Shown here: positions 4,512 through 57,943 of the stretch, one piece after another
Layout: each line of letters begins with the position of its first letter
Position numbering within the stretch: the stretch's first letter is position 1
From: Guillardia theta CCMP2712
Taxonomy: Eukaryota; Protista; Cryptophyta
NCBI RefSeq assembly: GCF_000315625.1
Contig: NW_005434613.1
Location: 342,441-406,417, forward strand
Length of the DNA stretch: 63,977 nucleotides
Reading direction: 5' to 3'
The notes under the pieces: generated by a model
Databases searched by the model: none
What the model saw: only the letters and a program-made list of their open reading frames with translations
What the model was told of the DNA's origin: nothing
Made by a program: the position numbers and the translations under genes

Positions 4512-4542
<31 letters not shown>

Positions 4543-8023: not shown

Positions 8024-8099
8024 GACCATCCCGTCATTGCGCGTGAAGGACGAGGCGAGCGATCTGATTGGAAGCAGCAGCATTATTAGGCGCTACTTT

Positions 8100-14204: not shown

Positions 14205-14836
14205 TTGCGAACTCATGGTTCGAAGCAGAGTGTGCAGATCTCGATTTTGTTCTTGTAAAATAATTGGTAAAGCACGTCGTTGTGTCGGTTGAGTAGAAGT
14301 CAAGGTTGGAAGGAGGTAGATGAAAAGGAAGCATAAGCGTACAGGACGACGGCAACACTTGCGCCTACAACGCTCCTTCCCCTCCTACAGCGCTTCCAAC
14401 CTGTTTCAGCTTCGGCATGTTGACCTTGCCATCATTTTCCTCTCCCTCTCCCCCGTTCCTGCCTTGTTCCCTCAGCCTCTTCTGCGCTCCCTCCCCTCCC
14501 CTTCCTCGACGCATGTTCGTGCATGGCGTTGCTTTCCTAGCACGAGTTGTTCCAAACAAGGGCAGGTGGTAGGGGTAGTAGGTTCCAAATCTTACTTGGG
14601 GGTGGGTACCGTTTGAAGGTCTGGGGAGTACTACCCTACCCCTGAGGCCCTGTTGAGTTCGAGCCGTACCCCTACCTTCTGGGAGCCCTTGACGGACCCG
14701 CTATCCATATACATATCTCAGAAACCCTACCCTACCCCACCCTATTTGGCTTTCAACCCCTTTACCACGGTCAAACCACCCACACCTACCATTCTGAATG
14801 ACCCACCCTCCCCTAGCTCCACCCAGACCTCCCGCC

Positions 14837-24469: not shown

Positions 24470-25748
24470 TCAGTGGTGAAATCGAGTCGATGGTGCCTGC
24501 CCCTGCCCCTATCCCTGCTCCTCTTCCTGCTCTACTGCCCCTGCCCCTGCCCCTGCCCCTGCCCCTGCCCCAGCCCCGGCCACGGCCTGTGCACCTCCCT
24601 CAGATCCTACCGTGCCACATACGGGCGCTACAAAATCATCTTCTCCGCCTCCTAGCACGTGAACTAACATCGAGAAGTGATACCTCGTCCTCGCGGACCT
24701 GGACGTGGACGTCACCATCTTAATTTCTGTATGGCCGGTCGGCGGTACACGATGCTCGACCCCGAGGTGAAAATGGATCATTGGCGTTCAATGAATTCGA
24801 CGAATCTACTCTACCGAGACTTGATCTACTCCTGCACCACTCTCTCCGACCTCGACCCTGACCCCCCCGCTGGCGCTCAGGCTGGCAAACGACCCTNNNN
24901 NNNNNNNNNNNNNNNNNNNNNNNNNNNNNNNNNNNNNNNNNNNNNNNNNNNNNNNNNNNNNNNNNNNNNNNNNNNNNNNNNNNNNNNNNNNNNNNNAGCC
25001 CCAGCCCCAGCCCCAGCCCCTGCCCCTGCCCCTGCCCCTGCCCCTGCCCCTGCCCCTGCCCCTGCCCCTGCCCCTGCCTCTATCCCTCCTGCTCCTGCTC
25101 CCCTGCCCCTGCTCTCACACCTTCCCCATTGCCCATCTCCGATGCGTCTGCTCATGATCAACACTACAGACTTGATCATCAAAACTCTGACTCGGACTCA
25201 AGCTCCTCAGAATAGCTCCACGAACCGGAAGATAGGCGATCTCTGGCTTTCTGTCCTTCGCACTCATGTCTGGACTGGGCTGGTTCTGGACGTCATGACA
25301 ACTCCTCCCTACACCAACAATACAAGCCCCGTTGGCCTCCCTGCGCTCTCTGAACCAGCCCAACAAAAGACTTCGGATCATAATGTGAGCTGTGCCACCC
25401 ATCGCCTGCCTCAGGCCTTTCTTCCCATCCCTGCAGGTATGGATGAACTTGTTCACGCTGAAACCTTGATGGAACTCCGGTACCTGCCGTAACTCCATGC
25501 AGCAACTCTGATAGCGGAGTAGGATGGATGCATCCAGGAGGCGGTGCATGGGGACCCTTCGTTTCATCGTCTGCATGATCGCACGCTCCGGAAGTATCGA
25601 GCTGATATGGGTCTCGCCGTCCTCCTCGCATGACCCATGCGCTCCTGCTCCTGCTCCTGCTCCTGATCTGGTTACCTCCGAGACGCTGCTGTACGTGGTT
25701 GGTGAGGAGTTGCTTGCTGCCTTCTCAGTGTTTCGAGATGAACTCTGA
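24470..25748 (+). CDS. hypothetical multi-exon gene interrupted by an assembly gap; boundaries uncertain
   Basis: Protein-like segments (..RHHLNFCMAGRRYTMLDPEVKMDHWRSMN.., ..IGDLWLSVLRTHVWTGLVLDVM.., ..LRFIVCMIARSGSIELIW..) are separated by splice-like sites and (CCCCTG)n tracts. No family recognised. Confidence 0.4.
24897..24996. other. assembly gap (100 N) next to (CCCCAG/CCCCTG)n
   Basis: Run of exactly 100 N, a typical placeholder for a gap of unknown size. Confidence 0.99.
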
Positions 25749-30822: not shown

Positions 30823-33800
30823 TCAGTTGGTAGCGACGCGCTGATTGATAGCAAGCGCGATGGAATCTAAAACCGAATTCTCGTTGGCCAGCAGATCCTT
30901 CTGCAAGCTGATGATGCTTTGTACGCTCCCTTGCACGTGCTGCCCACTCAAGCTCTCAAACTCAGCCTTTGCACCCAGGCAGATCTTGGAGGAGTAGGGG
31001 AAGGGATGTAGGAACGATCCTCCGATGTAGAGGCACGTTCCCACCCTCGTTATGCTCGTCACGCTCCCGTCCACTCCTCCTCCTATCGTCGCCCACACTC
31101 CCGTGAACACATGGAAGCGAGCGATGTGCGGGTAGGAGAGCCCGTCGACGCTAACGAAGTCTCCTCCTACATACAGGTAGTCTCCTAGCAGCGACAGGGC
31201 CTTCACGCTAGCGTCGAAGTCCCCGAGGCTCTGCCATGCTCCGTCCTGAAGCCTGCACAAGTTGCGCTCCCCCGTCTCTCCTGCGAGCCTGAAGGCTCCT
31301 CCGATGAAGAAGTGCCCTTGCTCTAGCAGAAGCTTGTACACTGTCCCTCCTTCGATCCTGCTCCCCACTCTCTGCCACTGGCTCCCATCGTAGTAGCACA
31401 CGTACTGCAGCATACGACATTAGCAACATTTTCTCCCGCTCTCTCCCTCCTCCTCACCCGACATCCGTTGGGGTCCCGTGACTTGAACTTGCCGGCAATG
31501 TACAAGTTCTGACCCGCGACGGCCAAGCTGAAGACAGCTCCTACAAGGTCTTGCGGACCAAAGTTGACCCACCAGCTACCGTTCCATGCGATCACTCCTG
31601 CGCATGCCATGGACGTGCTCCTGACCTGCGAGGAAAGGTCATGGAGAGGAAGGGGGGAGAGATGGAACAGACAGGAAAGATTCTTGTGAAAGATCCTCCC
31701 AGGATGAGAAGGTCGTTGTAGACGACCATCGTGTTAACCGCTCCATCCAGACTGTAAGCAAGCAACTTCTGACTTTGACCGTCAACTTGCATGACCTGGA
31801 GTAGTCGTGAGCAAGGCACGACCAGCACGCTCGAGTGTGTTACGTTAGGAGAAGTTTCGCCGGTCTGACTCTCGAAGACGGAAGAGAAGTAGAGCAGATC
31901 TTTGTACATCACGGTGGATGTGACGGTTGAGAAAGATGCGCTAACCAGAGGATAAAAGGAAGAGTTGGAAGCTGAAGCGAAAGTTTCAGTACAGAAAGAG
32001 CCAGTGAACAGGGAGCAAGGAGAGAGAAGATTGGAAAGAGAGGAGGAGAAGAGAGGAAAACGTGAATGAGGCGAATCGTAGATAGCAAGGAGGAGGAGGA
32101 GGAGCAAGAGGAAGAGGAGCAAGAGGAAGAGGAGGACGAGTAGGAGTAGGAGGATCAGGAGGTGGAGGAGGTGGAGGAGTAGGAGTAGGAGGAGAAGGAG
32201 TAGTAGTAGGAGGAGGAGGAGGAAGAGTAGGAAGGAAGAGGAGTGGGGGGGGGGGGGGGGGGAGGGAGGAGGAAGTACATTACCATTCTTCGAATCCGCA
32301 ACCTCCAGTGCGATGAAACCAGAACCGGACGATTTCAAACCAGCAACGACCGATCGGCCGAACAAGAATGGTTGCTGCATCGCGTCTAAGCGCTTACAAG
32401 GCAGGAGACAACAATTTACCTCAACGTTGCTCGATCTCGACACCTCCCCCTCCTTCACTACCACCTGCACGTTCACCGACCCTGACAGGGGAGGCGTGCG
32501 ACACTCGATGATCCCCCCCACCAGCGAGACGTCGAGGCAATAGGAGGAGCCCAGCAGGACCTGGAGCTCGAAGGAGGAGTTGGTCAGCCTCGGCTCCACA
32601 AACAAGGCGTTGATCTGCACGGACGTGTTGCCCTGCATGTTTGCTAACGAAGGGGCGACGCTGAGGATCTTCGGCCTTGGCAAGACCTCCACTCGAACTT
32701 CGTGCAACGCACTGGTATCCTCTCCTCCAAACGCCGTCCCGCCGTTGTCCAGCGCCAAGATCTGCAGCACGACAACTCCGAACTCCTCAGGAGAGGTGGA
32801 CAGGGTAAGAGTGCCGTCTTGACGCAACGAAGGCATGTTGGTGAAGAGGTAGGAGCCATCGGGAATGACGCTGACTAGGAACGTGACACTCTGAAACGCC
32901 TCCATTCTCGTTCCAGGACTGATGTCCGTCGCAAACTTGGGCAGGCTGTATTCAGAACCCTGGATGACTTTGAGGTCGGGCTGAGGGATGGAGAACGAGG
33001 GCGGCTGGTTGACGATGAGGAAATTTAGAGTCAGAAGGAGCTTGTCGCTCGAGTCCCTTCCTCCCCTGAGTGTCCCGCCGTCGTCGACGAGGACGACGCT
33101 GACGTCACAAGTCCCCTGCCAGAACCCTTGCCAGTCGAAGTTGAGATACCCCGACAGGTTCACGTGCGGGCGCTGGACAAACAAGGAGGAGTTGCAGTCG
33201 CCCAGGAGCGAGCTGATGAAACTCAGCTTCTGATTCCTCTCGTCCAGCGGCTGCTCAACGAGCTGCAGGACCTGCTTGCTGTACGTTCCGCTGTCAAGGC
33301 TCGGGATGATAAGGTGATTGAAGAGAGTGCGGAACGAGGGCGCTGTGTTGACAGGCTGAACGTGGAGGGAAAAGGTGGAGGTTGTGAGGTCAGAACCATT
33401 CCTTGCAGTCCCTCCGTCGTCTTGCAGCGTGACTGTGACGTCAAAGTCTCCGTTGACATACTGACCAACAGAGAAGCAGAGTGTTCCGTTGAGCGACAGG
33501 TGGAAGGAAGAGAACACTTGGCTCCCGTTCCAGGCGCTGGCAACAGCAGCAGTGTCCCTGAGCGAGAAGGTCATGCTCTGGTTGGCCTCGAACCAGGGGC
33601 CTGGCGATATCTTGGTAGCAAAGTTAAGGTAGCAATGAGACTCGGTGCCTTCCAGGATGGCTATCTGCGGGAGGAGAGTGAACGAGGGAGGAGCGTTGGG
33701 GCTGAACAGGAGGAGGGTGAACGTTTGCTCGAGCGACCTGTTGTAGTTTCCTGTCGCGGGATCTCCCGGCCCGTTGTCGGAGAGGATGACGCGGAAACGA

Positions 33801-36800
33801 GCAGAGCCGAAGGCGAACCGGGCGGTAGAGAAGGACAGAGTTCCCACCAGCTGACCCCCGTCAGCTGAGAAACCGAGAGATGGAGGGTCGACGAAGAGCT
33901 CAGGAGAGTCGAAATTGAACGACCAGGTGAGCGACTGGTTGACATCGTTCTCTCCAGCTGAGACATTGTGCGCAAACACAAGCAGCTGCCTCGCTCCTGA
34001 GATGCCGGTAACGTCAGTCGCCTGGAACGTCGGGATGTGATTGGTGGGCAGGACTCTGATCGTGAAGTTGTGGAGAGGACTTGTCAAGTCGACCTGAGGG
34101 ACGTTGAAGTTGAAAGCGTGGTCGGAGATGCTAGCAGAGAACGACGACTCTCCTCTGATACCCCTGGACGTGAAGCAGAGAGTTCCATTCGGGGATATCG
34201 TCGGCATCTCTTCCAGAACAAGTTGCCAGTCTTGACTCTGTACGTGAAACTCCACACTCTGACAAGGGAAGTGCGAGGCCCCGTTCTTGCAGCACAACCT
34301 CTCATCGGGGAAGGTACTTCCAAACACAGCCACAGTCGTCATGCTGGAAGAAGTTTGTTGGATGTACATCCCATTCACTCCCATGTAAGCTCCGGTTGTT
34401 GAATTCCGCGGCTGCAAACAAGTCTGTGCGTTGCAGCGCCAACCAGAAAAGGCGGTGCTGGTAGCAACTTCAGCGAAGGACGCGATGGCATTGTTGATGC
34501 CGTTGGCTACCATGATACTCTTTCCCTCGTCGTCCGAGACGACAGAAACAGCACCGATGAGCGAGTCAACCTTGTTGAAGTAGAAGGAGTAGACCACCAC
34601 CCCATACTCCAGGCTCATGGCCATGAGCTTCGGGCCAGAGTTTGACTCGTAGTACTGCCATTCAGTGATCCCTCCTGCATCGATCCTCAGGTTGTAGCCA
34701 TGGTGGGAGACTTGATACTCCGTCAGGTCCCTGTTCCTCAGCCGCAAGTTCTCGTACTCAGTGATTGAGCTCATTTCAGTAAACTTCTTCAGCTGCACGT
34801 TGTACTGCAAGATCGTTGACTTCGGCTGCGCGTTGACACTCGCGACTTGCCCGATCGCCAGGTAAGTCGTGCCATCGGACACGAAGCTGTACAACTTCTT
34901 CACCCCGCGCAAGCAAGGAGTTGAGAAATCGGTGTCGGAATTCAGACAAGTCGGCAGGCAGAACAGTTTGCGGCTGTAAACATCAGCTCTGATCGTGGGA
35001 ACACTCTTGAATTCACTTCCAAGGTTCTGAAGGAACACGTAGGTCCTGCTGTCGGAGTCTAGAATGTAAACTGGTAACGAGACGCATTTGGCCTGCCCAG
35101 GAGAATTTCCCAAACCCACAACAAGGAGGTCCGTCATTGTGTTCTTGTAAGACGCTTTGACCACCTCGATGTCAATGTTCTCGGCCTTTGGCAGGGAGAA
35201 GCTGTTGTACCTTGCGAAGGTGATGTTTGAACATTGAAGCTCGTTCTTGACGATCCCGTTCACAATGTCGCAGCTCGACACGTTATAGTCGATCATCCAG
35301 AACTGAATGTCATACTGCGTCTCTTCCTCTATCGACACGATGAGATGGTTCAACCTGTCCAATCTTGCCAAGGAAGCATTCACGTTGGCGACCCTGTTGA
35401 CTTGTTGAAATTTTAGCTCCGTAGAACTCCAGGAATACAGGGCGGATCCGGAGCAGTTGAGATCTGAGGCATGAATGTAGGAGAACAAGAGATAGTGATT
35501 GATCTTGTTAAATCTCTCATTCGTAAAGTAGTTCAGCGCACTCAGACTCGGATTTTCTTTCCCATCGCACGTCAGATACGGAACACACTGAATCTCTTCA
35601 AACTTGTCACCCATCAGGCGATAAACACAGGTCTTATGTGCATATGCAACGTAGAAGCAATACATCACAGTGTCTGGATAGCTCGTCGGCGACATGTCTC
35701 CGAACTTGACAAACATCGCTGGCTCAGAGTTCTGAATCACTTGCGCAGCTGTAAACTCGTCATTCTGCCTGCGCATGATCACGATGTCTACGGAGTTGTT
35801 GGAGCCCACGACGGTCTGGTTGGCGATCAGCAAGAAGTTCTTGCTCCCGGCAGAGAACTGGTGGAAACCCAGGGAGCGAGAAGTCCACAAGATCTTCGGG
35901 CACGCCTTGGGGTCAAGGCAATCATTGAAGGAATCCTGGATATGCGTGATCAGCATCAGATGTGACAGACAAGACAAGATGTAACAGACAAGACAAATGT
36001 ATCATAGAAGACATCTCACCTTGAAGTCGTTGAAGTTTCTTTCCCCGTCCTTGATGACGTCGATGTATCTCAACTGCCCGTCAGCATCTCGGCTGAACGA
36101 GGACAAAGCGCCATCGTAGAAGGAGGCGACGACGACGCGGGTGCCATACCCACTTACAAACACACTGTGCGCTCCAATCAGCCCGTCGACAACACGATTG
36201 TTGTCTGTTTGATCCCCATCGGTGATCTTTCCCATGAAGGAAAGCATTCCTGTTGTACTATCCACTTGGAAGATCATAACAGTATTCAGCAAGTCAGACA
36301 CTGCATACAGATTCTGATAGTCAGAGGAAATGGCGATGCTCTGCAAGAACAACAAGTCAGTATCTACTCCTGCATCCTGCCATGGCTCTACCTGCAATCC
36401 CAGAGCTGAATCGTACAAGACGGTGTCGTTGTTCTGATGAAGTTGTCCACTCTCCGGATTCCTCGAAAACAGCAGAATTTTCTTGATTCGCATATCAGAA
36501 CAGACAAGAACAACCCAGACATATACAACCTGAGACTCTCTTGCAGCTACATACACGCTGATGTTGCTTGCAACGATCGAGACAGGTCCCTCAAGGTACT
36601 GAACTTTGCTGTAGATCGGTTTCCAGGTAAGCTCTGATATCCCGCTCACTGCGTCTCGGGTTGCAAAGATCAAAGAGACTGAGGCATCCAGGTAGTCTTG
36701 CAGCAGCTTGACTGAGACAGCGTTGGGAGTAAGAATTGCCTGACCGCCCCCGAAGTCAGTTCGAGATGGACATTCTTCAAGCTGTAAGACCCTCGTCAGT

Positions 36801-39800
36801 CGAGCCTGTTGCTAAACACAACAAGAACAACCTCAAGGAAGAATCCATCATTCCATCGCAAGAAGAGGGAGGCGCTGGAGCCCTGAGGGACCACTAGGAA
36901 AATCTCCCTTGACCATTCGTAGAAGGAAACCTGTTTCAAGTCAAACTTCATCGCATCTTGACTTTCTCGTTCTTGCTCACCGATTCAGCCATTGTTGTAG
37001 AAATGTTCTGAACTCGCAGACATGTCAGAGCGTTGCTAGCAGAGCACTTGTAGACGAGCGAGGGTTGCTGAAGCAACACAGTCAGGAAAACAGGAACTAT
37101 AAAAATTCTACTATTGAGCTCACTGTATCATCAAGGATGGATATCACAACATGCAGATAGTTCCCAATAATCTTCGTAGCAACTCCAGAAGCAAGTGGCG
37201 ATGCGTCGTTGAGGGTGAGAACTTTGTCAAGAACTAGTCCTTCTGAATCTGCCCAACAAGCTTACTCCTTGACCTTCAATGAAGCTGAACATACCTTGAA
37301 CAATACGATACAACGTCGCTAGAGGACATGATGGACAAGAGGGAGCGAACGAAGTCAGTGCGATGTAATCTTGTCCGCCATATGAGAAGTTGGTGATAGC
37401 AGATGAGTGCTGATTGTCTATTTCTGTTCTGTTCGCCAGTGCAAGCGAAATAGAACCTCCATCCTCAATGATCGGGTACGCATAACTTGATCCAACATAG
37501 TTGACGACGATAGCATACTTCATCTGCGTCATGTTATGATCGATGATCGTCCACTGTAACAATCACATCTCAGTCATGATCACATGAATCGCTCAGAGGG
37601 TACCTGTCTTGCTCCGTTCGTGGGAACGGCTTGAATCTCATAAAGAAGACTGTTGGAGCGATTGAAACCAAACAGGTAAGAATGCACTTGTAATGATACT
37701 GAATCCCAGCTCCTTGCCGCGAGGAAATAATCATTCCCGCCGACCTCGAAATGTAGAAATGAAGAATATCCACAGGATTGGAAGGGCGCTGGTGTCGAGG
37801 CCTCCCAGTTTTCTCTGCTCAACGACCAAGGCAGCAGAGTCGTGACGAAAGTCCAGGTCGAATCATTCGCTGCCCTCTGGTAGACTTCGCTAGATGTCAG
37901 GAAGTAGAATGAAGTGAAAGTTCCGGTCAGGTTCTGATTGAGGTATCCTGCCGCTGTCGTGTACCACAACCTGGTCGTGCGCTCAGTCGTAGGAATGAAT
38001 CCGCAGTCTCGCTGCAGGCAAACTCGCTGTATTAAGGGAATCCATCCCCAGTCCGTCAGGTTGCTTTCTTGTACGAACCTCTCAACAGAGACTGAAGTAC
38101 GTCTGAAGCCAAAGTCCCAAGGAGGGGTCACACAAAAGATCGAGGTACAGGACTGGGAGGAACAGGACAGGTTGGCCTCAGCAGAAACCATCGAGTGACT
38201 GCCGTATGAGAATCGGCAACGATATCGCTGAGGAGTCGGAGGAGTCAGTGGACACGAGGAGACGGTCGTACGAGCTCACCTCGTTGGCCTTGAAGTTACC
38301 GATGACCTTCATGCTCGCGTTTGTCTCGATGGGACTCCACGTAAGAGAAGGAGAGTTCCATCCGTTGGGTAGAGGACTTCTCGTGCTGACCCAGTACTCT
38401 TCCTTGAACGGGAAGACTTTGGGGATTTCTCCCTTCGCCCTGGTAGCAAGTCAATCGGACGAGAGCAGACAGAGCTCGGAGGTGCAGTACCATTGATACA
38501 TGGAGACAACCTGGTCTCGTGTCAACGAGCTCTTGAAGATCTTTACGTGTTTCAGCAGGCCAACGTGCGGGAAAACATCGCCAGTCTCCCTGTCCTCCAG
38601 GTTTCCAACTGTGAAAGGGACCCTAGAGGCTGCGCACTTGCGCTGAGACATGAAAGGGTACGTGATAGCGCCACATTGCTGCTGTCCACATGCATGGACG
38701 CTATGAACCTGAGAGGTGAAGTTACACATGACCATGATTTCATCAAGAAAGCAAGATTCACCATCTCGCCATTGACAAACAGCGTCACGTTCCTTCCATC
38801 GTAAGTACCAACCACGTGAGTCCATCGGTAGAGGTCAAGAGCAGGAGTGACGGCGTGGACCAGTCTGGCTGTACTGCCCTCTAGGGACATCTCGAAGAAG
38901 AAAGTCGTCGAACCTCCGTTGGCGTCCATGATGTTACTGTACGCTAGCCTCCAACCTGACAGGCAGTCTGGGTTCTGCTGGTAGACTCCCACCAGCCCGG
39001 AGAACGGGGTTGAATCTCGCTCCATGGTGAAGAGCACTTCAACGGCTAGGCTGCTGCTGGGCAGCTGATTTCTCTTGAAGGGATCCAGCAGCTCAATGTC
39101 GTCAGTGATGTAGAGCCCGACATTGAGGTTGCCGTCGAGCTGCATGCTCTCGAACTTGCCGTTGTTGACCAGAAAAGTGCGAGAGCTCAAGGGGAGAGGA
39201 GCTGCCACGTCCAAGTGAAGAGAGCACCTGTTGACGCATCCCGTCAGCCTTCGTCTCAACCTGACTGCGCTCTTACCTTGGGCCTGTCAGCACCAACCCT
39301 CCAAGTCCTGAGCTGGAGTCCGTGAAGACAGCATCAGCGATGGTGGTGTCAGAAGATTGGCGGCAGTCACTAGCGGTGCTGCTCCGGATGTAGGTGCAAG
39401 ATTCTCCAGTGCAGGACACAGTTTGACCCGAGCTGAAGTTGTTCACTTGATCACTGACGTGCGAACGTTGCAGACTTTGACCGTTGAAATCCCATGACCC
39501 AACACAACTTGTTGGCAGAGGTATGCCTGCGTTCTGCTGTGGGCTTGCAGAAGAGGCGAGCTCAGCTAGAGTCGGGCAGCCGTTTGCTGATATCAAGAAA
39601 GTACTGTTGCCACTGCTGAAACTTTCCCATCCACAGAGGAACGATAGAAATTTGGACCCTTGAGGCATATCAGTGCTGACCTTTTCCATCTTGATCCTCT
39701 CCTCCCCTACAAACACACTTAAGACGAGAAATTTCTCCATATGTACAACAACTTACCATCAACAAGTCTGTCGACAAAGATATTGCTCCCTGTGATGTTG

Positions 39801-48800: not shown

Positions 48801-51800
48801 TTGAGGTGTAGGTGAAGAGCTCTCCTGTAACAGTTATCACCGCTCCTCCCTTTGCAGGGAAGCGAGGTGACATCGGCTCGTACGTCCTCCAGTACGGCTC
48901 GAGGGTCAGGAAGCAGTCGGTTCCTGCGCTGCAGCAGATGATGCGATCCTGGAGCAAAACTTGCACAGAGAGGGAGGTAGAGTTCTCATTGACAGATGCA
49001 GGCAAGGCACATACTAATCTCGATGGACTCACTACCGTCGCATCCTTCATTATCCCGACCTCAGGAAACTTGCAATAATACTGCAACCCGTCGGTGAATC
49101 CTGCTCCTGACACTTGAACAATTTGAGTATCATAGTTGGGCGACAAGAAGCTCCAGTACGAGGAGAAATTGACACATTTGGATCCTCCGGGGTTGTCCAA
49201 CAATCCTATAGCTCGTACTGGGTCCGATAGATTCAAGCTGAAACATTTCCCGTCCATGGTTTTCTCCGATAAGATGGTCACGAACTGTACTGTACACGTG
49301 ATCGAGGATTGGCTGTTCCAGGTTACTTGTGTCGATGTCGTGGCAGGATCCAGAATGTCGGTGAGGGACTGACTGGTACTGTCTGTATAGAAGACACAAC
49401 GATACTGGTTGACTGGTTTGAAACCATACCCTGCGATCTGCACAACGAAAGACTTGTTGCCCCTCTGGCAAGGGAGCGTAACTTGGTAATCTGAGATAAC
49501 CTCCAGAAATTCGACAGTTTGCCCGGTTCCAAAAAGATCAAAGAAATCAATGACAACAGAATCATTGGTGATGATGTTCAGATTCGTGATATTCGCTGGG
49601 TAGTACCAGACTGGTGTACATCGCAAGAGTGAGCTATTGACAAATTCAACATCGGTGATTTTTACGTTTGTCCCGTCACTGAATTTACAATGGTAAGTGT
49701 TAGCAGACTCTGTGAAGCTTGACCCGTAGATTTCGATCGTTTGCCCGCTACATAAGACTCGATTCGGCGTCACCCGCACCCAGGCAGGGAGAATCTCGAA
49801 GGTTTGGTTCTGTGCCGAGTAGACAACGGTGGAGTTGGGCATACGGTAGAGGATCAAGTACCCAAAGTTGGACTCCTGCTGACGCTGGGAGAAGTCAGGA
49901 GTCTGGAAGACGATCGACGTAGTCGAGCTCGGCTGCTGCTCTGCACCCTCGATGGCCTCGCCGTTGATGTAGAAGATGCACTTGTACGGCGCCGTCGGGT
50001 CGAACCCGCTCCCATTGATGCTGTAGCTCTGCCCTCCATAGGCGTGCCGACTGATGACTTCGACTACGAAGTGAACGGCTGTGAACTTGACAGTGCAGTA
50101 AGGGTTCTCAAGGGTACAAGTGACATTGTAAGATTCCATGCTTGTGAAGGCGAGGACCTGGTCGTCACAGATCAATGAGACTTGTACAAGCTCCTCAGCA
50201 TAATCTTTGCCCCATTCAGGTGTCAACCCTTCCAGTATGGTGTCGCTCTTGATGGTAACATCTGCGTACATGTGGTTCTCAACACCGAATCGACACCTGC
50301 AGGAAGAGAAACTTTGAAAACCATAGCCGTAGATCAGGAACACCTCGTTGCCTGCGGCAGAGGCAAAGTCCGTTGTCAAACTGATGTTATCCCAGCCAGC
50401 AAACAAGTTGACTTGATGGTTGTTGAGGTTCAAAAACTCCACTCCTTCCACTTCGATGACGATCTGCGCAATGCCTGGAGTGAAGAAAGGGACCAAACAT
50501 CGGATTTGCCGCAACGCGACGATCTCGAACGTCGCGTCCTTACTCGCGTTCCTGACTGTGACGGTGATCAGCATGTCGGCAGAGAACAGAAATCCATTGA
50601 TGACAAGGTAACCGCCTTTGGACGGAAGCGAGTACCGATCGATCTCCAACCAGACAGGCTTGTACAAGAAAGATTGAGACTGCGAGCTCGAGCAAGGGGA
50701 GATTTGAAGGGTTTCTGACACCAGCAACGTGACGTTTGACAGCTTGAAGTCATACTCCGTGGACAGAAACGTCAAGGCTCGCAGACTGACAGCAATAGAG
50801 CTTGAAGTTGTCAAGTTGTCGCCAGTGGAAAATTGCAAAGTGAGCGGCTGGGAGGACGGAAAACCAAAGCCAGAGACTTGAACGACTTCTCCTCCATTCG
50901 CAAACGAGTCTGTCTTGTTCAGCGAGCTCCAGCACGTCTGGAAGGCAACGGGCCAAGAGGGAGTTTCGTCGATGTATCGCACCTTGGTGAAGGTTGACAC
51001 CGTCTCGTTCCCACAGACGAGATTCGATTGCGATGGGAACCTGCAAAGGAATGAAGTCAAACAACCGCATGGGAACCAGCAAAACTTCTCAAATTCTCTC
51101 ACCTTTTGCTTCTTGCCAGTAAGTTGATTGTCTTCTGATCAGCTCCGAACTCAAACGTGAAGTACTGACTGCCGATAGCTATGTAACCAGCCTGACCCAA
51201 CAGATCGGAGCTCAGCACCACTTCCATGCCGCTTGTGAACTCGACGCAACCCGCGGTACCAGAGACAAGTGAGACGGTAGAAGATGCTGCTAACTTGTAC
51301 AAGGATGCGTCGATGAACGTGCTGACGTCAGTCAGGTTGTAGTTTCCAACAAAGAACTCTCCCCATGCTACCGTGTAGTTAGACACTATCAGTTGCCTGC
51401 TCTCCACCGTTCCGTCCACCATAACCATCTCGTCTCCCCTGACAAACGCAAAGACGTACGTCAAGGATGGGTTGAACCCGGCCCCACTGATAGTGAAGAT
51501 CGTGTCTCCCGCAGCCGTGGAGGTCGTTGGGTATATTGGACTCTGTATGGTCTCGTAGACACTGTAGTCGATGTAGTCCGGGCGCGTGTCGTTGAGCTCG
51601 TAGTAGAAGCAACCGTAACCGAAGCAAGAAGAGCAGAGGATATCAGAGCAGTTGGTTGTATCCTGCATCCGGTCGAAGGTCTTGAGCTGTCTTTCGATCA
51701 CCTTGACGTAAGGATAGGTCGAGAACATATCTAGTCGCGCCACCATGATCTGTAGCAGACCGCTGTAGCCCTCCCACAAAGGAGTGATACAGTAAGCTTC

Positions 51801-54800
51801 AGTGTCGCTCACGTACTCGATGCTCGTGTTCTGATGGAAGGAATCCTGCCAGTAGTAGCACTCATACCGATGGTCGACCCAGTCAGCCACGTTGACTCCA
51901 AAGCTCAGGGTCAGGTTGATCCGATCGCCTCCTACCGCACTGCCTTCTGAGTGCGCGACGATATCAGCGAGGTATGAGAACATGTAGAAGTCGGTCGTGA
52001 AGGTGGAGGAATTCTTGCCGTTGACATCAATCCCTTGCAGTGCAAAGTGCAGTATCTCTTCGCCGTAGTGCCAGGGTGGTACGATACAGTAGAAGGTGCG
52101 GGTAGGGCGGGTGAGGGGGTAGAGGGAGATAGCATCTTCCGTTAGCAGCGCCGTAGTCGAAGAGTACAGTCGGGAGGAGGATTGGAAGTGACAGGAATAT
52201 GAGTAGCCGTCGATGGCATGACTGACGTAAGAAATTCTGCCGATGAACTTCTTGGGAGTGCTGGAATCTCCGATAACATTGGAGAACTGAACAGCTGAGC
52301 CTGTCGTCTTCATCTGGGAAAGAACGCCAGGGAGTATAGCAACGAAGTCGTCAAACTCAGTCAGCTCAACACTTGAAACCCCGTAAGTAAGAGACGCGTC
52401 GCTGTAGATTACGATCCCGTACTTCTTCCCTCCTTGCAGGTACAGCGGGACCACCATCTCTATCTTCACATTGCTTCCATCGGCAGTGATATTGATATCC
52501 AACTCAGTCCAAACGTCGGAGTTGAATTCGTTGTTTTTGAACCCGCAGTTTGTATCAGCAACGCCGCAGCTCTTCATGAAAAGCCTGAAATGCGAATCTG
52601 CGCTCGAGGCAAGAGTGAAACTGGACACGTTGATAGATTTCTTCGCATCAATGTCGAACATAATCCCCCAGTACAAGTTCGCACCTGAGACAGCAATGAC
52701 GTCTGTGGTCCCAGCTATGTCAAGTTGTTTGGTTTGAGGAGGAACTGTCAGGTTCAAACCCGCGGTCGACATCACCAACAAGGTGTTTCCATGCAGAGGC
52801 GCCTGAGTTGCGCTCAGGTTGTACCAAGCCTGGATGGAGACAATCGGAAACAGACCGGACTGAACAGGGAGCATGACATAAACGACAAGGTCTGAGGGGT
52901 GAGGCAGACTTGCAGTCCCGGCTACTCCTCTCATTACGATGGTGCAATTTCCATCAACCCGCTGCATCATCATCATCTCGTTCTCTACGCGCAGGAAAAC
53001 TCCGGGCTTGAGGACTTGCGGCTGAATCAGCTGTACGAAGCACACGCGAGTGTCGCTGCTTGAGATCTGATCCTGCAGCGTTAGCGTCTGTGCGTAGGAG
53101 ACGCCCAAGTTGGCGTCACTGGCAGGATACAACCATTCTTGGAGTGTGCACAACATGGAAGTCTCCGAGATGTTGGTTGACGGCGATGGAGCGCAAGGAA
53201 GTCCAAGCCAGACGTAGCTGGGGTCAGTGACGAAGAAGTGGCAAAGGTAGGAGACCGAGGGGTCGAAACCAGAGCCGAAGACCGTCACAGGAGACTGGTA
53301 GCTCTCAATACTGCGAGGGGAGGCGCGACTGACAGAGGGGAGAGTCGAGACGTTCAGCTCGGTCCCCGTTACGTTGTAACGAGATCCAACCTTGCATCCA
53401 AAGTCCACAAAGGTTATCTGCGTCGGCTGCGCCACCAGCCTTGACTGTACAGTAAGAACAGCCTGTGAGCCAGTTATGGAAGGAGTGGTGCAAACGTCCC
53501 CCTCTAGTCTTGACGTGACTGTCTGCCCTGTGCTGAGACGGAAACAGCAGAAGTAGTCAAAGGCTCCTGACGTGTCCTTGCCGACAAAAGTCAGCGCTAT
53601 GGTTGAGGAGTTGGATTGGACCCAGATAGAGCCAGACTGTTGAGAGTAGCAGAGATCAAAAGTCTGGAGGTAGTTGTTGGCAACGGTCTTGATGGACAAG
53701 ACAAGGGAAGTGAAGTGGATGGAGGAGCTAACAATCGCATCAGGGTGGGCCAGGGAGGATCCTGGATCAACCAGCACCACAGACCAAGTGGCTGAACCCT
53801 TGACAGCCTCGGACAACGTAACTTTGACTGTGTTCTCTGTGCATGAGAGGGCTGGCAATGAAGCGGTGAAACTGTCGTAGGCAAGGTTTGAGATGGTGTC
53901 GATCACCACCTGACTGGTCGTCCCTCCCCTATTGCAGGCAAACTGAAACTGGTACGACCGTTGCGGGTTGAGCCCCCTGCCATAGAAGCGCAACTGAGAG
54001 TCCAACAAGCTTGAAATGGACGGCTGGACTTCGAACCACCAAACCGCCAGGTACTTCATGTTGGGCTTCAAGAACGAGGAGAAGGCGACAGTGTGCGAGC
54101 ACGCGGCAGTGTCGCTGTCCTTGCAGAGCGTGAGGGAAACCTCGCTCGCCTCCCTTGGCCAGGTCGGGATAGTGAAGGAGAGCCGACGGGAGTCGAGAAC
54201 GATCGCAGGGTCAGTAAGAAGCGAGAAGGTGGAGCTTGAGAGGTTGAGCCTATACGAAACGTTGCCGAACCCGTACCCTTGCAAGATCAGCAGCTGCCCA
54301 CCTGACGTGTACATAGAGCAGACCCCATCCGTCTCCTGCTCGCACGCGATCGCCGTCCAGAACTCGCTCAACATGACATGGCTGCTGTCCGAGTTGACCC
54401 ACCCTAAAGTACCCATAGAGCTGTACAGGTCAAGTCGGTACTGCACATCCGCTCTGTAGCCGATCAGCAAACTTTGATCGAACGTGCACTTAACAGCGCT
54501 CAGGTTCTTGAACTCCCCTGCTGTCTCGTACTTACTATTGCCTCCGGATATCTTGCAAGTCAGCGGCAGGTCTCCCCTGATGCCGCAGCCCTGCACGTTG
54601 AAGACCGTTGAAGGGCAGCGAGGGGAACAGAAGGGAGGCCAGGAGACGGCGTAGCTGACAAGGAGCGGCTGCATGTCAAAGAGGTATTCGTTGCCACCTA
54701 CGTTTTCAATCTCGGTCTCCTTCCCTCCTTGAAGCGAAAATGTTTTGACTATCGCCTCCTCTGCTTCGTAGGGCCAGCTCGGTAGGACAAGGTGGTAGTA

Positions 54801-57800
54801 TGGAGGGGTCGAGCTGTTTCTCAGCTGAACGGTGACATTCCTTCCCGACAAACCCACGAACTTGGCAATGTAAGTCAAGGAAGGGTCCCATGCAAGCACC
54901 ACGAGAGTGAGGTTCAAGTTCGAGCAGACGGTCCTGGTGTGAACACTGGAGGAAGCGTTGAAGTAGTCGGCAAGTCGGACGAAGAGGGGGATGTAGCTGA
55001 ACCTCAGGTCCATTCCTACGCTCGTAACGTTGTTCAGCTCGATGTCAACTTTGAACCGGCTTGGCATGCGGTAGTCGGGGGTAATAGCTGGAACCTGACA
55101 GACGACGCTGCGGTTGCTCTGGTAGACGCCCGACGAGGAGAAGCCGTTTGAATATCTACAAGTGACCGTGTCAGCATCGTAGAAACCGAAGCCGTAGACG
55201 GTCACGTCCGTCGACTGATCTGCCACTCCTTCTGAAGGCGAGAGACTCTCCAAGTACTGCACAAAGTTGACGATGCCTGCGGCCGTTGACGGGGGGGAAC
55301 CGACAGGCTTCCAGTCACTCCCTGACGACTCCAGCAGGAGCAATTTGGCAGAGGGAAAGTTGCAGGACCACCTGGTGAAGGAGCAAGCGAGGGAAGTGTC
55401 GTTGACGTACTTACAGCTGCAGCTCTCGAAGCAGCCCAACATCGAGCCGCAGCGTCCAGAGTCTGTCAGAGTGAAGTCACACCGGTAGTGGCACGGTAGG
55501 CTGGGGGATGAAGCCTGGGAAGCGCAGAAATTGAATCCTCGGACGATGAAAGAGTCAGAAGCGGCGGAGAAGACCTGATCTTCTACTACCCACGTTGAGT
55601 TTGATACATGCAATTGACCGATTCCCTCCTGAAGGGAAGGAATATTCACACCGTCAACGTCGATGTACAGACGTAGGTTGAGCTGTTGCGATGCAGCCTG
55701 TAAGGCTGGAGATGTACAAGTCAGCCGCTGGTCGCTCTGAAAAGCTGCTGGCAGGAAGATTGAGATTTGTGAGTTCGAGAAATGACAGGAATAGTTGCTG
55801 GTCTCGACGAACCCGAGGCCTTGGACGGAGACGATTGAGCCTTGTCGGGATATTGACAAGACACATTCATTCTCATCGCGGACTTGAGTGTTGGTCCATT
55901 GCGGGATGATAGACAAGAGAGAATGATCTGAAGTGGCTTCCAAGAGAAGACAGGAGTTGGAAACCAAGCTGTTTGTAACGCAAACACTGAGGCAGAAGTA
56001 TGAGTGACGGTCAATATTGGGAGCATCACATGCGAGGCTAGTGCTGTTAATGAAAGATGCCTGAGACGAGAAGTATGCGCTTGATTGGCAAGAGCAAGTA
56101 GAGTTGCAAGTATCCTGAGAACCTATCCGGTTCCATTGACATGTGTAAGCTTGATTGGAAGAAAACCCATATCCATTCACGTATATGGCATTTGACGAAT
56201 TGACCAGCACGACACTTGGTGAAATTCCGCGCCAAAACTGTACAAACGTGAAGCTCAGCTGCGAGTTGGAGACTGCAGGCACAAGGCGGGATGTTCCTGT
56301 CTCTTGGAAGAGAGAAACGTTCGCTGAAGAATCGGAGGAGAAGAAAGATTTGGGGATCAAACACGTCATGCTCGTGCTCGACCAAACTTGACAAGGTCCT
56401 TTGACTGATAGCACACTCTCGTTCATCGCTGCTTGTCTGAATTCCAGCAAGTAAGGTGAGATGGTACTGAATCCGATCCCAGTCACGTTGATTGAAAGCC
56501 CTCCCTCCGCCAGGCCCTCCACTGGCGATATAGACGACACACCACCTGCCTCGTAGTAGACGTCATAGTTCTCCATGCCATCAGTCTGTCTCAGCAACGA
56601 ACCCTCTTCTAGCACCTTAACGTCAATATTGCTTGACTGGACTGACATCGGCCATTGAGGAGCAAAAAAGTGAAGCTCGTTGTCAGCAATGTATTGGAAG
56701 ATTGAGGAGTTGACGGAGACGCCGTTAGAGTCTGAGAGAGAACAGCTGTACTGCTTGTGATTATCAAAGCCGCCACCTCTGACTGTCAGCGTGTAACTGC
56801 CTCCGTTGGGGAAGACGGCGCTGTAGATCTTTTGCACAATGGAGTAATAGAGAAATGAGTTTGAGTGCGTGCTCGATAAAGGGAAGCCCTGCCGGAAGAG
56901 CTGGACGCTAGCAAGGCATGCATGATATCGCCATGTCGGTACTCTACATAGGACGACGGCTGGGGAGACTGCAGCAAGTTTGATGGGCGAGTTTCTGGTA
57001 AAATTGCCACAGGTAAAAGAGCAACTGAAAAGGATTTCATCTGGATTGGCAGAGCTGAAGTAAAATCCACCACCGCTGATCGTGATCAGCATATTCCCCA
57101 AAGACGAGCCGGTGCTGGGAGAAAGGCTTCTCCATGAGCCTGTGTGAACTGGTCAAAGAAGAGGAGGAACTATCAATACTTCACCCGTGAAATAAATAGG
57201 ATGCTCCTCCCCACGATTCGTGACAACCGAGAAATTCTCCCCCCTGAGCAGGGTAAAAGTTGCCATGCTCTCTGTACGGTTCCAATACGGAGCTGGACAA
57301 AGCACGGTGAAGAATCCGACCACGAGAGCTTGAGTATCAAACGGCGAATTTCCATCAAGTGGCGAATATCTACCAAGGCACAAGAGTTTCAGAAGAGTAA
57401 AGAGATGTAACTAAAAGGGAGTACCGGCAAGTATATGAGAAATTCTCATTGAAACCGAATCCATCGACACGGACTGCATACGGCGAAGTTGACAGCAGGT
57501 ATGTTTCATTCGCACTCGTCCAACCATCTGTGCACGAGATTTAGGAATTGAGAGGTCAAAAGCAATGTACCTAGAAAGTGGATAGTTTGATTTATGGCAT
57601 CACCGACAAAACTCAAGTCAGATCCCCCGTGTTTGACAACAACTTGCACTAGAGTAGACGCCTTATCCCACGCAAATGTTCCACATCTCAGCAAACTGTC
57701 GCTTTCATATGATGCGGTAACATGTGTCTCCATCCCAAACCAACATTCATAATCCAAACCACTGAGGAAATTATTCCCGGAAATCAAAACTGAAACATCG

Positions 57801-57943
57801 ACGTTGGCATCCACTTCTCTTGGGGAAATGGCATAATATGTGTTGTCCGTGATATCAATGCTAAGGGTGACAGGTAAAAGTAAAAGAGCAAGAGCATTCG
57901 CGATCCTCGCCAGGCAACGGGATCGAAGATATGAAATCTTCAT
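30823..57943 (-). CDS. giant secreted repetitive adhesin/matrix-like protein (~8,000-8,500 aa): signal peptide, IPT/TIG repeats, cadherin-like repeats, LamG, EPTP-like and other beta-propellers; frame break near 43570
   Basis: The minus-strand ORFs 57506-57943, 57153-57383, 51099-57101, 43459-51102, 39825-43592, 39273-39740, 38552-39259, 37580-38191, 37227-37562, 36002-36673, 31592-35977 and 30823-31413 are collinear. The junctions I checked join through ~45-62 nt GT-AG introns (e.g. 51041-51102). The N-terminus MKISYLRSRCLARIANALALLLLPVTLS is signal-peptide-like and N-glycosylation sequons are abundant. Confidence 0.8.
43122..43568. repeat. near-identical 102-bp direct repeat (43122-43223 and 43467-43568; period 345 bp = 115 aa) inside the giant gene
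   Basis: Both copies encode LQDNGGVEYGGQNVSQVTGIEIEIIPVNDAPTFE; 4 synonymous mismatches counted by eye. Confidence 0.93.

What the first reader, a model, noticed from the sequence alone, without database searches (positions are those of the whole stretch)
30823..57943. ~27-kb gene for a giant mosaic secreted protein built partly from bacterial-adhesin-style repeats
Seen, N to C: a signal peptide; >20 Cys-containing repeats of the form P..G...GG..I.V.G.GF....Y.C.F (~57860-46500); a block of ~115-aa repeats with D[NDS]GGxxxGGx[ND]...PVNDxPxF (~46500-40190); propeller/LamG/EPTP-like segments (~40000-34400); a second DxGG block (~34300-32680); one more TIG; and a C-terminal propeller (DGAVNTMVVYNDLLILGGSF, GDYLYVGGDF, GGGVDGSVTSI) with no TM helix. 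Known: these patterns match IPT/TIG domains and the cadherin-like Ca2+-binding repeats of giant bacterial surface proteins. Inference: a very long extracellular filament or adhesin (cell covering, scale, mucilage or prey capture) of an architecture I do not recognise as described. Best candidate for a novel system in this window.
Basis: partly seen in the sequence, partly recalled or inferred. Interest (0 to 1): 0.85.

Follow-up and report, generated by a model that had tools for sequence, protein, structure and literature searches.

The report
Giant secreted TIG–cadherin-like protein gene
A real, about 27-kb, roughly 21-exon gene of a cryptophyte-type alga encodes a protein of about 8,500 residues that looks secreted and adhesin- or matrix-like; it is built from known domain types and belongs to a conserved family that nobody has characterised, so it is noteworthy but not a new kind of system.

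Summary
On the minus strand, 57943 to 30823, a signal peptide is followed by:
- at least 27 IPT/TIG domains
- 15 cadherin-like units of about 115 aa
- a LamG domain plus beta-propeller segments
- 5 more cadherin-like units
- one TIG
- a C-terminal Rax2/DUF5122-type propeller

No membrane helix was found. The pieces thread into one reading frame through short GT-AG introns. My provisional model has 21 exons and 8,541 aa.

The cadherin-like reading is supported. A two-repeat AlphaFold model (pLDDT 95.8) matches tandem cadherin EC domains. A profile of the repeats finds 10,440 proteins; the best hits examined are giant bacterial adhesin-type proteins carrying Big_9, Cadherin_4 and Cadherin_5.

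The architecture is not unique. Guillardia theta GUITHDRAFT_143231 (6,649 aa, annotated hypothetical) and two metagenomic proteins are colinear with it at 22-35% identity. A Hanusia phi transcript is a 69% identical orthologue.

Three caveats remain:
- There is almost no RNA in the one run I could lay, and no RNA run holds the sequence.
- The assembly has a 2-nt frame break at 43567/43566, at the edge of a duplication that is probably collapsed. Two other DNA sources have 73 letters where the window has 71.
- Exon borders between 39.3 and 36.0 kb are provisional.

Function (a calcium-stiffened extracellular tether or matrix fibre) is inferred, not shown. The scan holds no earlier report of this gene on other DNA.

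The parts
30823..57943 (-). Whole gene: ATG at 57943, stop at 30823-30825. The provisional model has 21 exons, 20 GT-AG introns and 8,541 aa, with one X at the frame break.
   Evidence: ORF maps; splice threading and manual junctions; colinear homologues.
57860..57943 (-). Signal peptide: a basic N-terminal region, then a hydrophobic core (residues 11-29).
   Evidence: Translation; it contains the hydropathy peak that starts at residue 11, and the two other peaks look like beta-strands inside domains. No signal-peptide predictor was available.
46489..57830 (-). N-terminal array of at least 27 IPT/TIG domains, probably about 30. It is interrupted by four short introns (57570-57528, 57424-57370, 57184-57140, 51102-51041) and by an unassigned insert of about 380 aa at roughly 53250-52100.
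   Evidence: Pfam TIG; own-repeat HMM. TIG domains are split across introns 1-3. The insert was not identified.
40224..46488 (-). Cadherin-like block 1: 15 units of about 115 aa with the consensus N-x-x-P-x-F ... E ... NE..Q.L.F ... L.DNGGT..GG ... PVN. It also holds a Cys-rich spacer and an unassigned insert of about 230 aa.
   Evidence: Own-repeat HMM; alignment A1; Pfam Cadherin_4; AlphaFold model of 43487-42792 at pLDDT 95.8; Foldseek best matches are cadherin EC pairs.
43566..43567 (-). Frame break. The assembly is 2 nt short at the 5' edge of a near-identical 105-nt segment (43570-43465, repeated at 43225-43120).
   Evidence: Sequence; offset identity. Contigs of two other DNA sources have 73 letters where the window has 71, at 43496-43566. 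DNA read depth is 2-3.5 times the local level over 43101-43500.
39757..39870 (-). Small exon that encodes a lactonase-type propeller blade (motif FSPDGRYVYGVD), flanked by introns of 49 and 50 nt.
   Evidence: aligned to the homologous blade of P0123. 7 of the 19 differences to a related strain in this contig fall within the 49-nt intron.
38471..39185 (-). LamG / concanavalin-A-like lectin domain, spread over two exons. The Pfam-matched part is about 39070-38711.
   Evidence: Pfam Laminin_G_3 at 38.3 bits; colinear with the LamG of G. theta P0059 and with P0123.
34300..38416 (-). Central beta-propeller region with many small exons whose borders are provisional. It holds EPTP-like repeats at about 37553-37337 and a Lactonase-type propeller at about 36331-36068. 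A propeller-like segment of about 600 aa at 35935-34300 is assigned only from weak leads.
   Evidence: Pfam Lactonase 24.8 bits, PD40 15.8 bits (below cut-off), EPTP 12.9 bits (below cut-off); atlas leads point to FG-GAP/propeller families at a score of 0.80 only; colinear with P0123 and P0059; the Hanusia orthologue covers 35767-32282.
32675..34288 (-). Cadherin-like block 2: 5 units.
   Evidence: 69% identical in the Hanusia phi transcript.
32435..32674 (-). A solitary IPT/TIG domain that follows block 2.
   Evidence: Pfam TIG at 22.1 bits, residues 1110-1189 of the 36001-31595 piece.
31972..32283 (-). Intron 18 (312 nt), the longest in the gene. It is filled by a CT-rich microsatellite that reads as poly-Leu in frame. 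Intron 17 (32419-32375, 45 nt) lies just upstream.
   Evidence: Sequence. The G. theta paralogue lacks about 140 aa here. The Hanusia transcript loses similarity at exactly these two positions, which looks like unspliced intron.
30826..31971 (-). C-terminal beta-propeller with five or more blades carrying a GG-x-F motif, over three exons. There is no hydrophobic tail.
   Evidence: Pfam Rax2 at 30.8 bits and DUF5122 at 17.6 bits, below its cut-off; 35% identity to the C-terminus of G. theta P0059; hydropathy.

Best explanation
This is one intact nuclear gene of a cryptophyte alga, probably Guillardia theta or a very close relative. It encodes a modular protein of about 8,500 aa (about 0.9 MDa) that looks secreted.

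The signal peptide would send the protein into the secretory pathway. No transmembrane helix or hydrophobic C-terminal tail was found, so it would leave the cell or stay attached non-covalently. It carries 186 N-glycosylation sequons and 189 cysteines.

About 30 IPT/TIG domains and 20 cadherin-like domains would form long rod segments. By analogy with cadherins, conserved acidic and Asn residues at the repeat borders would bind calcium and stiffen the rods. A central cluster (LamG lectin-type domain plus propellers) and a C-terminal propeller would be the binding modules.

The most likely role is an extracellular tether, adhesin or matrix/surface fibre that is expressed only under particular conditions or life stages.

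Shown: the gene, its domains, the cadherin fold, the family, and purifying selection. Inferred: secretion, calcium binding, rod shape and the adhesive or structural role.
For: **One gene**
- The switch from TIG to cadherin-like repeats happens inside one uninterrupted 2,559-codon ORF.
- The well-supported introns are canonical GT-AG, 43-62 nt long, and split single domains.
- The G. theta protein P0059 and the metagenomic proteins P0123 and P0131 are colinear with the model over 4,700-5,500 aligned columns (alignment length including gaps). In P0123 and P0059 this includes the small-exon region.

**A functional gene rather than a relic**
- Among the listed differences to a related strain in a metagenome, 21 are synonymous, 11 are non-synonymous, and 7 lie in one 49-nt intron.
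- A Hanusia phi transcript is 69.5% identical over 1,193 aa with no frame breaks.

**Domains and fold**
- Pfam hits for TIG, Cadherin_4, Laminin_G_3, Lactonase and Rax2.
- AlphaFold model of two repeats at pLDDT 95.8. Most of the 50 best Foldseek matches are tandem cadherin EC domains, at probability 1.0 and E about 1e-7.
- A profile of the repeats aligns in register with C-cadherin EC4, but only at E = 0.12.

**Repeat family**
- 10,440 representative proteins match at E <= 0.001.
- The top hits checked carry Big_9, Cadherin_4 and Cadherin_5, and one also has a type IX secretion signal (CHU_C). One sits in a bacterial genome assembled from a metagenome.

**No membrane anchor**
- Hydropathy scan of the model. 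The paralogue P0059 also lacks one.
Against: - **No expression evidence in this organism.** One RNA-seq run gave 2 reads on 6 kb, with about 6% of the run read. About a dozen runs guessed to be RNA hold next to none of the gene's words.
- **The frame is broken in the assembly at 43567/43566.** The repair rests only on a length difference (73 against 71 letters) in contigs whose letters I could not see.
- **Exon borders between 39.3 and 36.0 kb come from an ad hoc splice model plus weak homology (23-26% identity).** That model over-called in-frame introns elsewhere.
- **Secretion, glycosylation, calcium binding and rod geometry were not tested.** No signal-peptide or transmembrane predictor was available, only a hydropathy scan.
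- **About 1,000 aa remain unassigned.**
Confidence: 0.62

Rival explanations
1. The locus is a decaying or permanently silent pseudogene: a relic of a giant gene, broken by a frameshift in the cadherin-like block.
For: There is a 2-nt frame break at 43567/43566. RNA is almost absent in the run that was laid, and no RNA holder was found.
Against: - Apart from that one break, ORFs of 2,017, 2,559, 1,259 and 1,469 codons are intact.
- Differences to a related strain are mostly synonymous (21 against 11) and are enriched in an intron.
- The break lies exactly at the edge of a near-identical duplicated segment with 2-3.5 times the local read depth, which is typical of a collapsed repeat.
- Two other DNA sources have two more letters there.
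- The orthologue is transcribed in Hanusia phi.
Confidence: 0.12
2. The interval holds two or more separate genes that only look continuous, for example a TIG/cadherin-like gene ending near 39.9 kb and a propeller/cadherin-like gene from about 39.7 to 30.8 kb.
For: No transcript evidence joins the pieces. Exon borders in the 39.3-36.0 kb region are provisional. In 27 kb, a GT-AG thread can often be found by chance.
Against: - Homologues P0123 (6,780 aa) and P0059 (6,649 aa) run colinearly through the cadherin block, LamG and propeller junctions as single predicted proteins.
- The lactonase blade, LamG and TIG domains are each split by the short introns.
- No internal signal peptide was found by the hydropathy scan. 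I did not look specifically for alternative start sites.
Confidence: 0.1
3. The product is a membrane-anchored receptor or cell-cell recognition molecule, like Dictyostelium Tgr proteins or true cadherins. Its anchor would have been missed, either in an unrecognised 3' exon or through attachment to a membrane partner.
For: A second G. theta giant with the same repeat type, P0083 (5,723 aa), has a signal anchor and a transmembrane helix at residue 5406, followed by a tail of about 300 aa. TIG arrays are typical of receptors.
Against: The reading frame ends in a stop inside the last propeller exon. The colinear paralogue P0059 ends at the same place, also without a helix.
Confidence: 0.12

Closest known systems
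Guillardia theta hypothetical protein GUITHDRAFT_143231 (XP_005826832.1, 6,649 aa), with metagenomic kin P0123 (6,780 aa), P0131 (5,866 aa) and P0128
   Same: P0059 has the same order of modules: TIG array, cadherin-like array, LamG, EPTP/propeller region, second cadherin-like block, single TIG, C-terminal GG-x-F propeller. It is colinear with the model over about 4,700 aligned columns (gaps included), and P0123 and P0131 over about 5,300-5,500, although the two metagenomic proteins break off before the C-terminal part. P0059 has no transmembrane helix.
   Different: Identity is only 22-35%, so this is a paralogue or distant family member, not the same gene. The G. theta model has far fewer recognisable TIG domains and no clear signal peptide, so its N-terminus is probably mis-annotated. 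None of these proteins has been studied; no paper cites the locus tag.
Hanusia phi transcript-derived protein (EukProt, P0163, 1,254 aa)
   Same: It is the orthologue of the 35767-32282 part, at 69.5% identity over 1,193 aa. It includes cadherin-like block 2 and the last TIG.
   Different: It is only a fragment. It appears to retain unspliced sequence where this gene has introns 17 and 18.
Giant bacterial surface proteins with Big_9 / Cadherin_4 / Cadherin_5 repeats, such as the type IX-secreted 'gliding motility-associated' protein P0012 and the bacterial protein P0008 (from a metagenome-assembled genome)
   Same: They share the same repeat family: 30-40% identity to bacterial units, 10-37 units per protein, and the same conserved N-D-A-P-x-F / DDGGT.NGG / PVN motifs. 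Some also combine the repeats with Lactonase-type propellers.
   Different: The gene here is eukaryotic. It has spliceosomal-type introns, a eukaryotic-style signal peptide in place of bacterial secretion signals, housekeeping eukaryotic neighbours, and an N-terminal array of about 30 TIG domains that is absent from every listed bacterial hit.
Metazoan cadherin superfamily (classical cadherins, protocadherins, cadherin-23, CELSR, FAT)
   Same: The predicted fold and tandem arrangement match EC-domain pairs. The unit length is about 110-115 aa, and the linker motif is close to D-x-N-D-N-A-P-x-F. A profile of the repeats aligns in register with C-cadherin EC4.
   Different: There is no Pfam Cadherin (PF00028) hit, no transmembrane or cytoplasmic domain, and sequence identity to EC domains is only 11-18%.
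Fibrocystin / PKHD1 and PKHD1L1; Dictyostelium TgrB1/TgrC1 (from general knowledge)
   Same: These are large extracellular proteins with arrays of IPT/TIG domains behind a signal peptide.
   Different: They are membrane proteins. Fibrocystins also carry G8 and parallel beta-helix repeats, which Pfam did not find here, and none of them has cadherin-like arrays.

Membership tests
Cryptophyte giant TIG/cadherin-like/LamG/propeller family (type: G. theta GUITHDRAFT_143231) | Colinear domain order from the TIG array to the C-terminal propeller | tested here: met
   The BLASTP chain pairs model 3310-4927, 5245-6979, 7495-8107 and 8315-8543 with P0059 768-2438, 3119-4972, 5664-6307 and 6377-6601. Pfam on P0059 finds TIG, Laminin_G_3, EPTP and TIG.
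Cryptophyte giant TIG/cadherin-like/LamG/propeller family | Significant similarity outside the repeats (LamG, propellers, C-terminus) | tested here: met
   P0123: 265 bits, E = 3e-75, over the LamG/propeller region. P0059 C-terminus: 35% identity, 133 bits.
Bacterial-type cadherin-like repeat (Pfam Cadherin_4 PF17803 / Cadherin_5 PF17892 / Big_9 PF17963) | Match to the Pfam models above the gathering score | tested here: inconclusive
   The whole block 43604-39828 scores 39 bits on Cadherin_4 (cut-off 25.1), but no single stretch passes on its own. Single repeats give no significant Pfam hit.
Bacterial-type cadherin-like repeat | Homology to members of the family by profile search | tested here: met
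   The profile of 14 of the gene's own repeats finds 10,440 proteins at E <= 0.001, and the top hits reach E = 0 with 10-37 full-length matches each. The three top hits that were scanned carry Big_9, Cadherin_4 and Cadherin_5.
Cadherin fold (EC-type beta-sandwich in tandem) | Predicted three-dimensional structure matches solved EC-domain pairs | tested here: met
   AlphaFold2 with a 72-sequence alignment gave pLDDT 95.8 and pTM 0.82. The Foldseek top list is dominated by cadherin-23, N-cadherin, CELSR1 and protocadherins, at probability 1.0 and TM 0.45-0.54.
Metazoan cadherin superfamily (membership) | Pfam Cadherin PF00028 repeats, plus a transmembrane segment and cytoplasmic tail | tested here: not met
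   No PF00028 hit. No hydrophobic segment other than the signal peptide.
Metazoan cadherin superfamily / calcium-dependent rods | Calcium bound at inter-repeat linkers | not testable with these tools
   Conserved N1, E17, E37, D91 and N116 positions exist in 90% or more of aligned units, but no coordinates or ion modelling were available.
IPT/TIG domain proteins | Pfam TIG PF01833 above the gathering score, repeated | tested here: met
   110.7 bits and 76.4 bits in the two largest exons and 22.1 bits for the late TIG; the first-exon hit (19 bits) is just below the 20.9 cut-off. The own-repeat HMM finds 27 units.
Fibrocystin / PKHD1 family | G8 domains, PbH1 parallel beta-helix repeats and a C-terminal transmembrane helix | tested here: not met
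   None of these is reported by Pfam at E <= 0.01. No transmembrane helix.
EPTP/EAR propeller | Pfam EPTP PF03736 above its cut-off | tested here: inconclusive
   12.9 bits against a cut-off of 21 at 37562-37230. The colinear position in the paralogue P0059 scores 28.6 bits.

The most novel reading that the evidence does not exclude
This gene and its kin (G. theta GUITHDRAFT_143231, the Hanusia orthologue, and relatives known only from metagenomes) would form a lineage-specific family of megadalton secreted fibres. These fibres would build the still molecularly undefined fibrillar or surface layer of the cryptophyte cell covering, or a stage-specific adhesion apparatus. The family would have been assembled by fusing a eukaryotic TIG array to a cadherin-like-plus-propeller cassette acquired from bacteria.
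Probability: 0.15. Interest if true: 0.65.

Novelty: new variant of a known kind. Interest (0 to 1): 0.42.

Why it matters
If expressed, this would be among the largest proteins of a cryptophyte-type alga. It shows that the widespread bacterial cadherin-like/Big_9 repeat, sometimes together with a lactonase-type propeller, has been built into a conserved eukaryotic giant extracellular protein behind an array of about 30 TIG domains.

It also gives a concrete candidate for extracellular adhesion or surface-structure biology in a group where, as far as I know, such molecules are unidentified. And it adds a non-metazoan, non-membrane case to the question of how cadherin-fold rods are used outside animals.

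The value is limited because every domain type is known, the family already sits in public databases as hypothetical proteins, and there is no evidence of expression in this organism.

Tried and rejected
- **Single-sequence AlphaFold of three repeats** gave pLDDT 34.6 and was useless. Only the run with an alignment worked.
- **Pfam on individual repeats** gave nothing significant.
- **The dynamic-programming splice model** is useful as a thread, but it over-called in-frame 'introns' inside long ORFs, for example 56954-56889 and 47213-47145. I rejected the latter because removing it would cut strands out of a TIG domain.
- **Word-indexed homologue searches** with the TIG exon, and with the middle of P0059, found almost nothing because of length and word limits.
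- **ESM Atlas look-ups** for the propeller region and for the 380-aa insert scored only 0.80, which is at chance level.
- **A tree of 197 repeat units** was unresolved. It says nothing about whether the eukaryotic repeats have one origin or which way any transfer went.
- **Two metagenome scans** meant to fetch the related strain across the frame break found nothing.
- **Literature searches** found no paper on the family or on the G. theta locus tag.
- **Bacterial contamination** was rejected: the gene has introns, it has eukaryotic neighbours (Nop56/58, PUS7, MAP65), and its orthologue is cryptophyte.

Full report
**1. What is in the sequence**

On the minus strand between 57943 and 30823 there is a chain of very long stop-free stretches:
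- 57152-51102 (2,017 codons)
- 51138-43462 (2,559 codons)
- 43604-39828 (1,259 codons)
- 36001-31595 (1,469 codons)
- smaller pieces at 57943-57509, between 39752 and 36005, and at 31419-30826

Translation shows an N-terminal Met followed by a basic stretch and a hydrophobic core. After that come many repeats with the core G-x-G-F ... Y-x-C-x-F, then repeats carrying D-N-G-G ... G-G ... P-V-N-D-x-P-x-F.

Pfam gives:

| Family | Score | Where |
|---|---|---|
| TIG | E = 3.5e-32 and 1.8e-21 | the two largest pieces |
| TIG | weaker hits | first exon, and residues 1110-1189 of the 36001-31595 piece |
| Cadherin_4 | 39 bits (cut-off 25.1) | 43604-39828 |
| Laminin_G_3 | 38.3 bits | 39286-38555 |
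| Lactonase propeller | 24.2 bits | 36811-36005 |
| Rax2 C-terminal propeller | 30.8 bits | last exon |

HMMs built from the gene's own repeats count 27 TIG-like units in model residues 41-3698. They also count 15 + 5 cadherin-like units of about 115 aa, at 46488-40224 and 34288-32675.

**2. Gene structure**

The pieces are joined by short canonical GT-AG introns. Junctions I could fix by eye split single domains and restore the expected repeat pattern:
- 57570-57528 (43 nt)
- 57424-57370 (55 nt)
- 57184-57140 (45 nt)
- 51102-51041 (62 nt)
- 39919-39871 (49 nt)
- 39756-39707 (50 nt)
- 32419-32375 (45 nt)
- 32283-31972 (312 nt, filled with a CT-rich microsatellite)
- 31672-31626 (47 nt)
- 31457-31405 (53 nt)

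A simple dynamic-programming splice model threads the whole interval. Refined by hand, it gives 21 exons and 8,541 aa. The borders between 39.3 and 36.0 kb are provisional. That model also proposed in-frame introns inside long ORFs, which I rejected.

The neighbouring genes are ordinary eukaryotic housekeeping genes: Nop56/58, PUS7-type pseudouridine synthase, MAP65/ASE1 and a B-box protein.

**3. The frame break**

The 2,559-codon and 1,259-codon pieces overlap in different frames. The shift lies at 43567/43566, where the repeat pattern (G-x-F-x-I-N-V-S then L-Q-D-N-G-G) needs two more bases. This is exactly the 5' edge of a 105-nt segment (43570-43465) that recurs almost identically 345 nt downstream.

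Laying reads gave three relevant results:
- Contigs of a 2011 DNA run labelled as the same species (coded X2), and contigs of a freshwater metagenome (coded X6), both have 73 letters where the window has 71 (43496-43566).
- Raw DNA reads (coded X10) pile up to 2-3.5 times the local depth over 43101-43500.
- The 38-nt raw reads could not show a 2-nt indel at the 95% likeness threshold.

The simplest reading is a collapsed and slightly mis-joined tandem repeat in this assembly, not a real frameshift. I could not see the 73 letters, so this is likely rather than proven. In my working model the break is read as a single X.

**4. Is it one gene, and is it alive?**

There is no transcript support in this organism. 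The one raw RNA-seq run (X9) gave 2 reads on 6 kb, with about 6% of the run read. No run recorded or guessed as RNA holds the gene's words.

Four lines of indirect evidence nevertheless support one functional gene:
- **a. Shared ORF.** The change from TIG to cadherin-like repeats occurs inside one uninterrupted ORF.
- **b. Colinear homologues.** Guillardia theta XP_005826832.1 (P0059, 6,649 aa) and the metagenomic proteins P0123 (6,780 aa) and P0131 (5,866 aa) are colinear with the model over 4,700-5,500 aligned columns (gaps included). In P0123 and P0059, conserved motifs line up across every small exon of the LamG/propeller region.
- **c. Purifying selection.** Of the listed differences between the window and the related strain in X6, 21 are synonymous and 11 non-synonymous. 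Seven more fall inside the 49-nt intron 5. In that contig this is about 14% divergence in the intron against about 2% in the flanking exons.
- **d. A transcribed orthologue.** A transcript-derived protein of Hanusia phi (P0163) is 69.5% identical over 1,193 aa to 35767-32282. It has no frame problems, and it loses similarity exactly where I place introns 17 and 18.

**5. The organism**

Its identity is hidden from me. The closest orthologue is from Hanusia phi, which to my knowledge is closely related to Guillardia. G. theta proteins appear only as 23-36% identical paralogues, and the DNA is held by 2011 runs of a strain-labelled organism. I therefore infer Guillardia theta or a very close relative. 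One oddity is that a metagenome labelled 'freshwater' holds 40% of the words at 95-99% identity.

**6. What the repeats are**

- Single units do not reach Pfam thresholds.
- A profile of 14 of the gene's own units searched exhaustively finds 10,440 representative proteins at E <= 0.001 and 2,304 at E <= 1e-30.
- The best hits are proteins of 2,000-6,900 aa with 10-37 full-length units each.
- The three top hits that were scanned carry Big_9, Cadherin_4 and Cadherin_5. One also has a CHU_C type IX secretion signal and is named 'gliding motility-associated-like protein'. Another sits in a bacterial metagenome-assembled genome next to a second giant gene, and both combine these repeats with Lactonase-type propellers.
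- Units of this gene are 27-40% identical to the other units in the alignment (30-40% for the bacterial ones). That is as close as they are to each other.
- With a 72-row alignment, AlphaFold2 models two consecutive units (43487-42792) at pLDDT 95.8.
- Foldseek against the PDB returns mostly tandem cadherin EC domains (cadherin-23 EC12-13, N-cadherin EC1-2, CELSR1, protocadherins, desmocollins) at probability 1.0.
- The sequence profile aligns in register with C-cadherin EC4, starting at the N-x-A-P-F-F motif, though only at E = 0.12.

So 'bacterial-adhesin-style, cadherin-like repeats' is correct. Membership of the metazoan cadherin family is not met, because there is no PF00028 hit, no membrane span and no tail. 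A tree of single units was unresolved, so origin by transfer from bacteria is plausible but untested.

**7. The remaining parts**

- The LamG hit, the lactonase-type blades (including the small exon 39870-39757) and the C-terminal GG-x-F propeller (Rax2/DUF5122 type) are supported.
- The C-terminal propeller is 35% identical to that of P0059.
- EPTP is sub-threshold here, although the G. theta paralogue passes at the colinear position.
- Three segments stay unassigned: a 380-aa insert in the TIG array, a 230-aa insert and a Cys-rich spacer in block 1, and much of 35935-34300.

**8. How it most likely works (inference)**

- A signal peptide, no other hydrophobic segment, 186 N-x-S/T sequons and 189 cysteines point to a secreted glycoprotein.
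- From general knowledge, Ig-like and EC domains are about 4-4.5 nm long. On that basis, about 30 TIG and 20 cadherin-like domains could span roughly 200 nm if extended.
- Positions N1, E17, E37, D91 and N116 are conserved in at least 90% of aligned units. They lie at or near the repeat borders and are candidates for calcium ligands that would stiffen the rod.
- LamG and the propellers would be the binding heads.
- I therefore favour an extracellular tether, adhesin or matrix/surface fibre that is expressed conditionally.

**9. Comparison and novelty**

All domain types are known. The repeat family is very large in bacteria. The full architecture already exists in public data as unstudied hypothetical proteins; no paper in the library cites the G. 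theta locus tag. I rate it a new variant of a known kind (a giant modular extracellular adhesin-like protein) and of moderate interest.

Noticed in passing
window 43101-43500: Raw DNA reads (X10) and the metagenome contigs (X6) show 2-3.5 times the local depth over the 345-bp repeat unit. The assembly probably lacks one or more copies, so the true protein may have more cadherin-like units.
   Followed up: partly
window 41130: A contig of the 2011 DNA run X2 lacks one letter here, but 0 of 6 raw reads of X10 show it. This is probably an error in that contig, not in the window.
   Followed up: no
window 31972-32283: This intron is about six times longer than the gene's usual 43-62 nt. It is filled with a CT/CTC microsatellite that stays open in frame and reads as poly-Leu, which makes it easy to mistake for a transmembrane or low-complexity coding segment.
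   Followed up: yes
P0083 (Guillardia theta GUITHDRAFT_108698, 5,723 aa): A second G. theta giant carries the same cadherin-like repeat (up to 36% identity) but has a signal anchor, a transmembrane helix at residue 5406 and a tail of about 300 aa. It is a membrane-bound counterpart of this secreted type.
   Followed up: partly
L003 (bacterial metagenome-assembled genome GCA_964445695.1, contig CAYULF010000003.1): Two adjacent giant bacterial genes combine Big_9/Cadherin_5 repeats with Lactonase-type propellers. This is the same pairing of modules as in the central part of the algal gene.
   Followed up: no
P0163 (Hanusia phi transcript), residues about 1120-1160 and 1194-1254: The transcript-derived protein reads through what look like unspliced introns at the positions homologous to introns 17 and 18 of this gene.
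   Followed up: partly
window 11144-12373 (-), 22053-24026 (-), 61068-62033 (-), 14798-15280 (+): The neighbouring genes are Nop56/58-type (Nop + NOP5NT), PUS7/TruD pseudouridine synthase, MAP65/ASE1 and a B-box zinc-finger protein. These are ordinary nuclear housekeeping genes.
   Followed up: partly
window 24897-24996: There is a run of 100 N here, which is an assembly gap.
   Followed up: no
run X6 (labelled freshwater metagenome): This run holds about 40% of the sampled words of the gene at 95-99% identity. A close relative or strain therefore lives in that sample, which is odd if the organism is the marine Guillardia theta.
   Followed up: no
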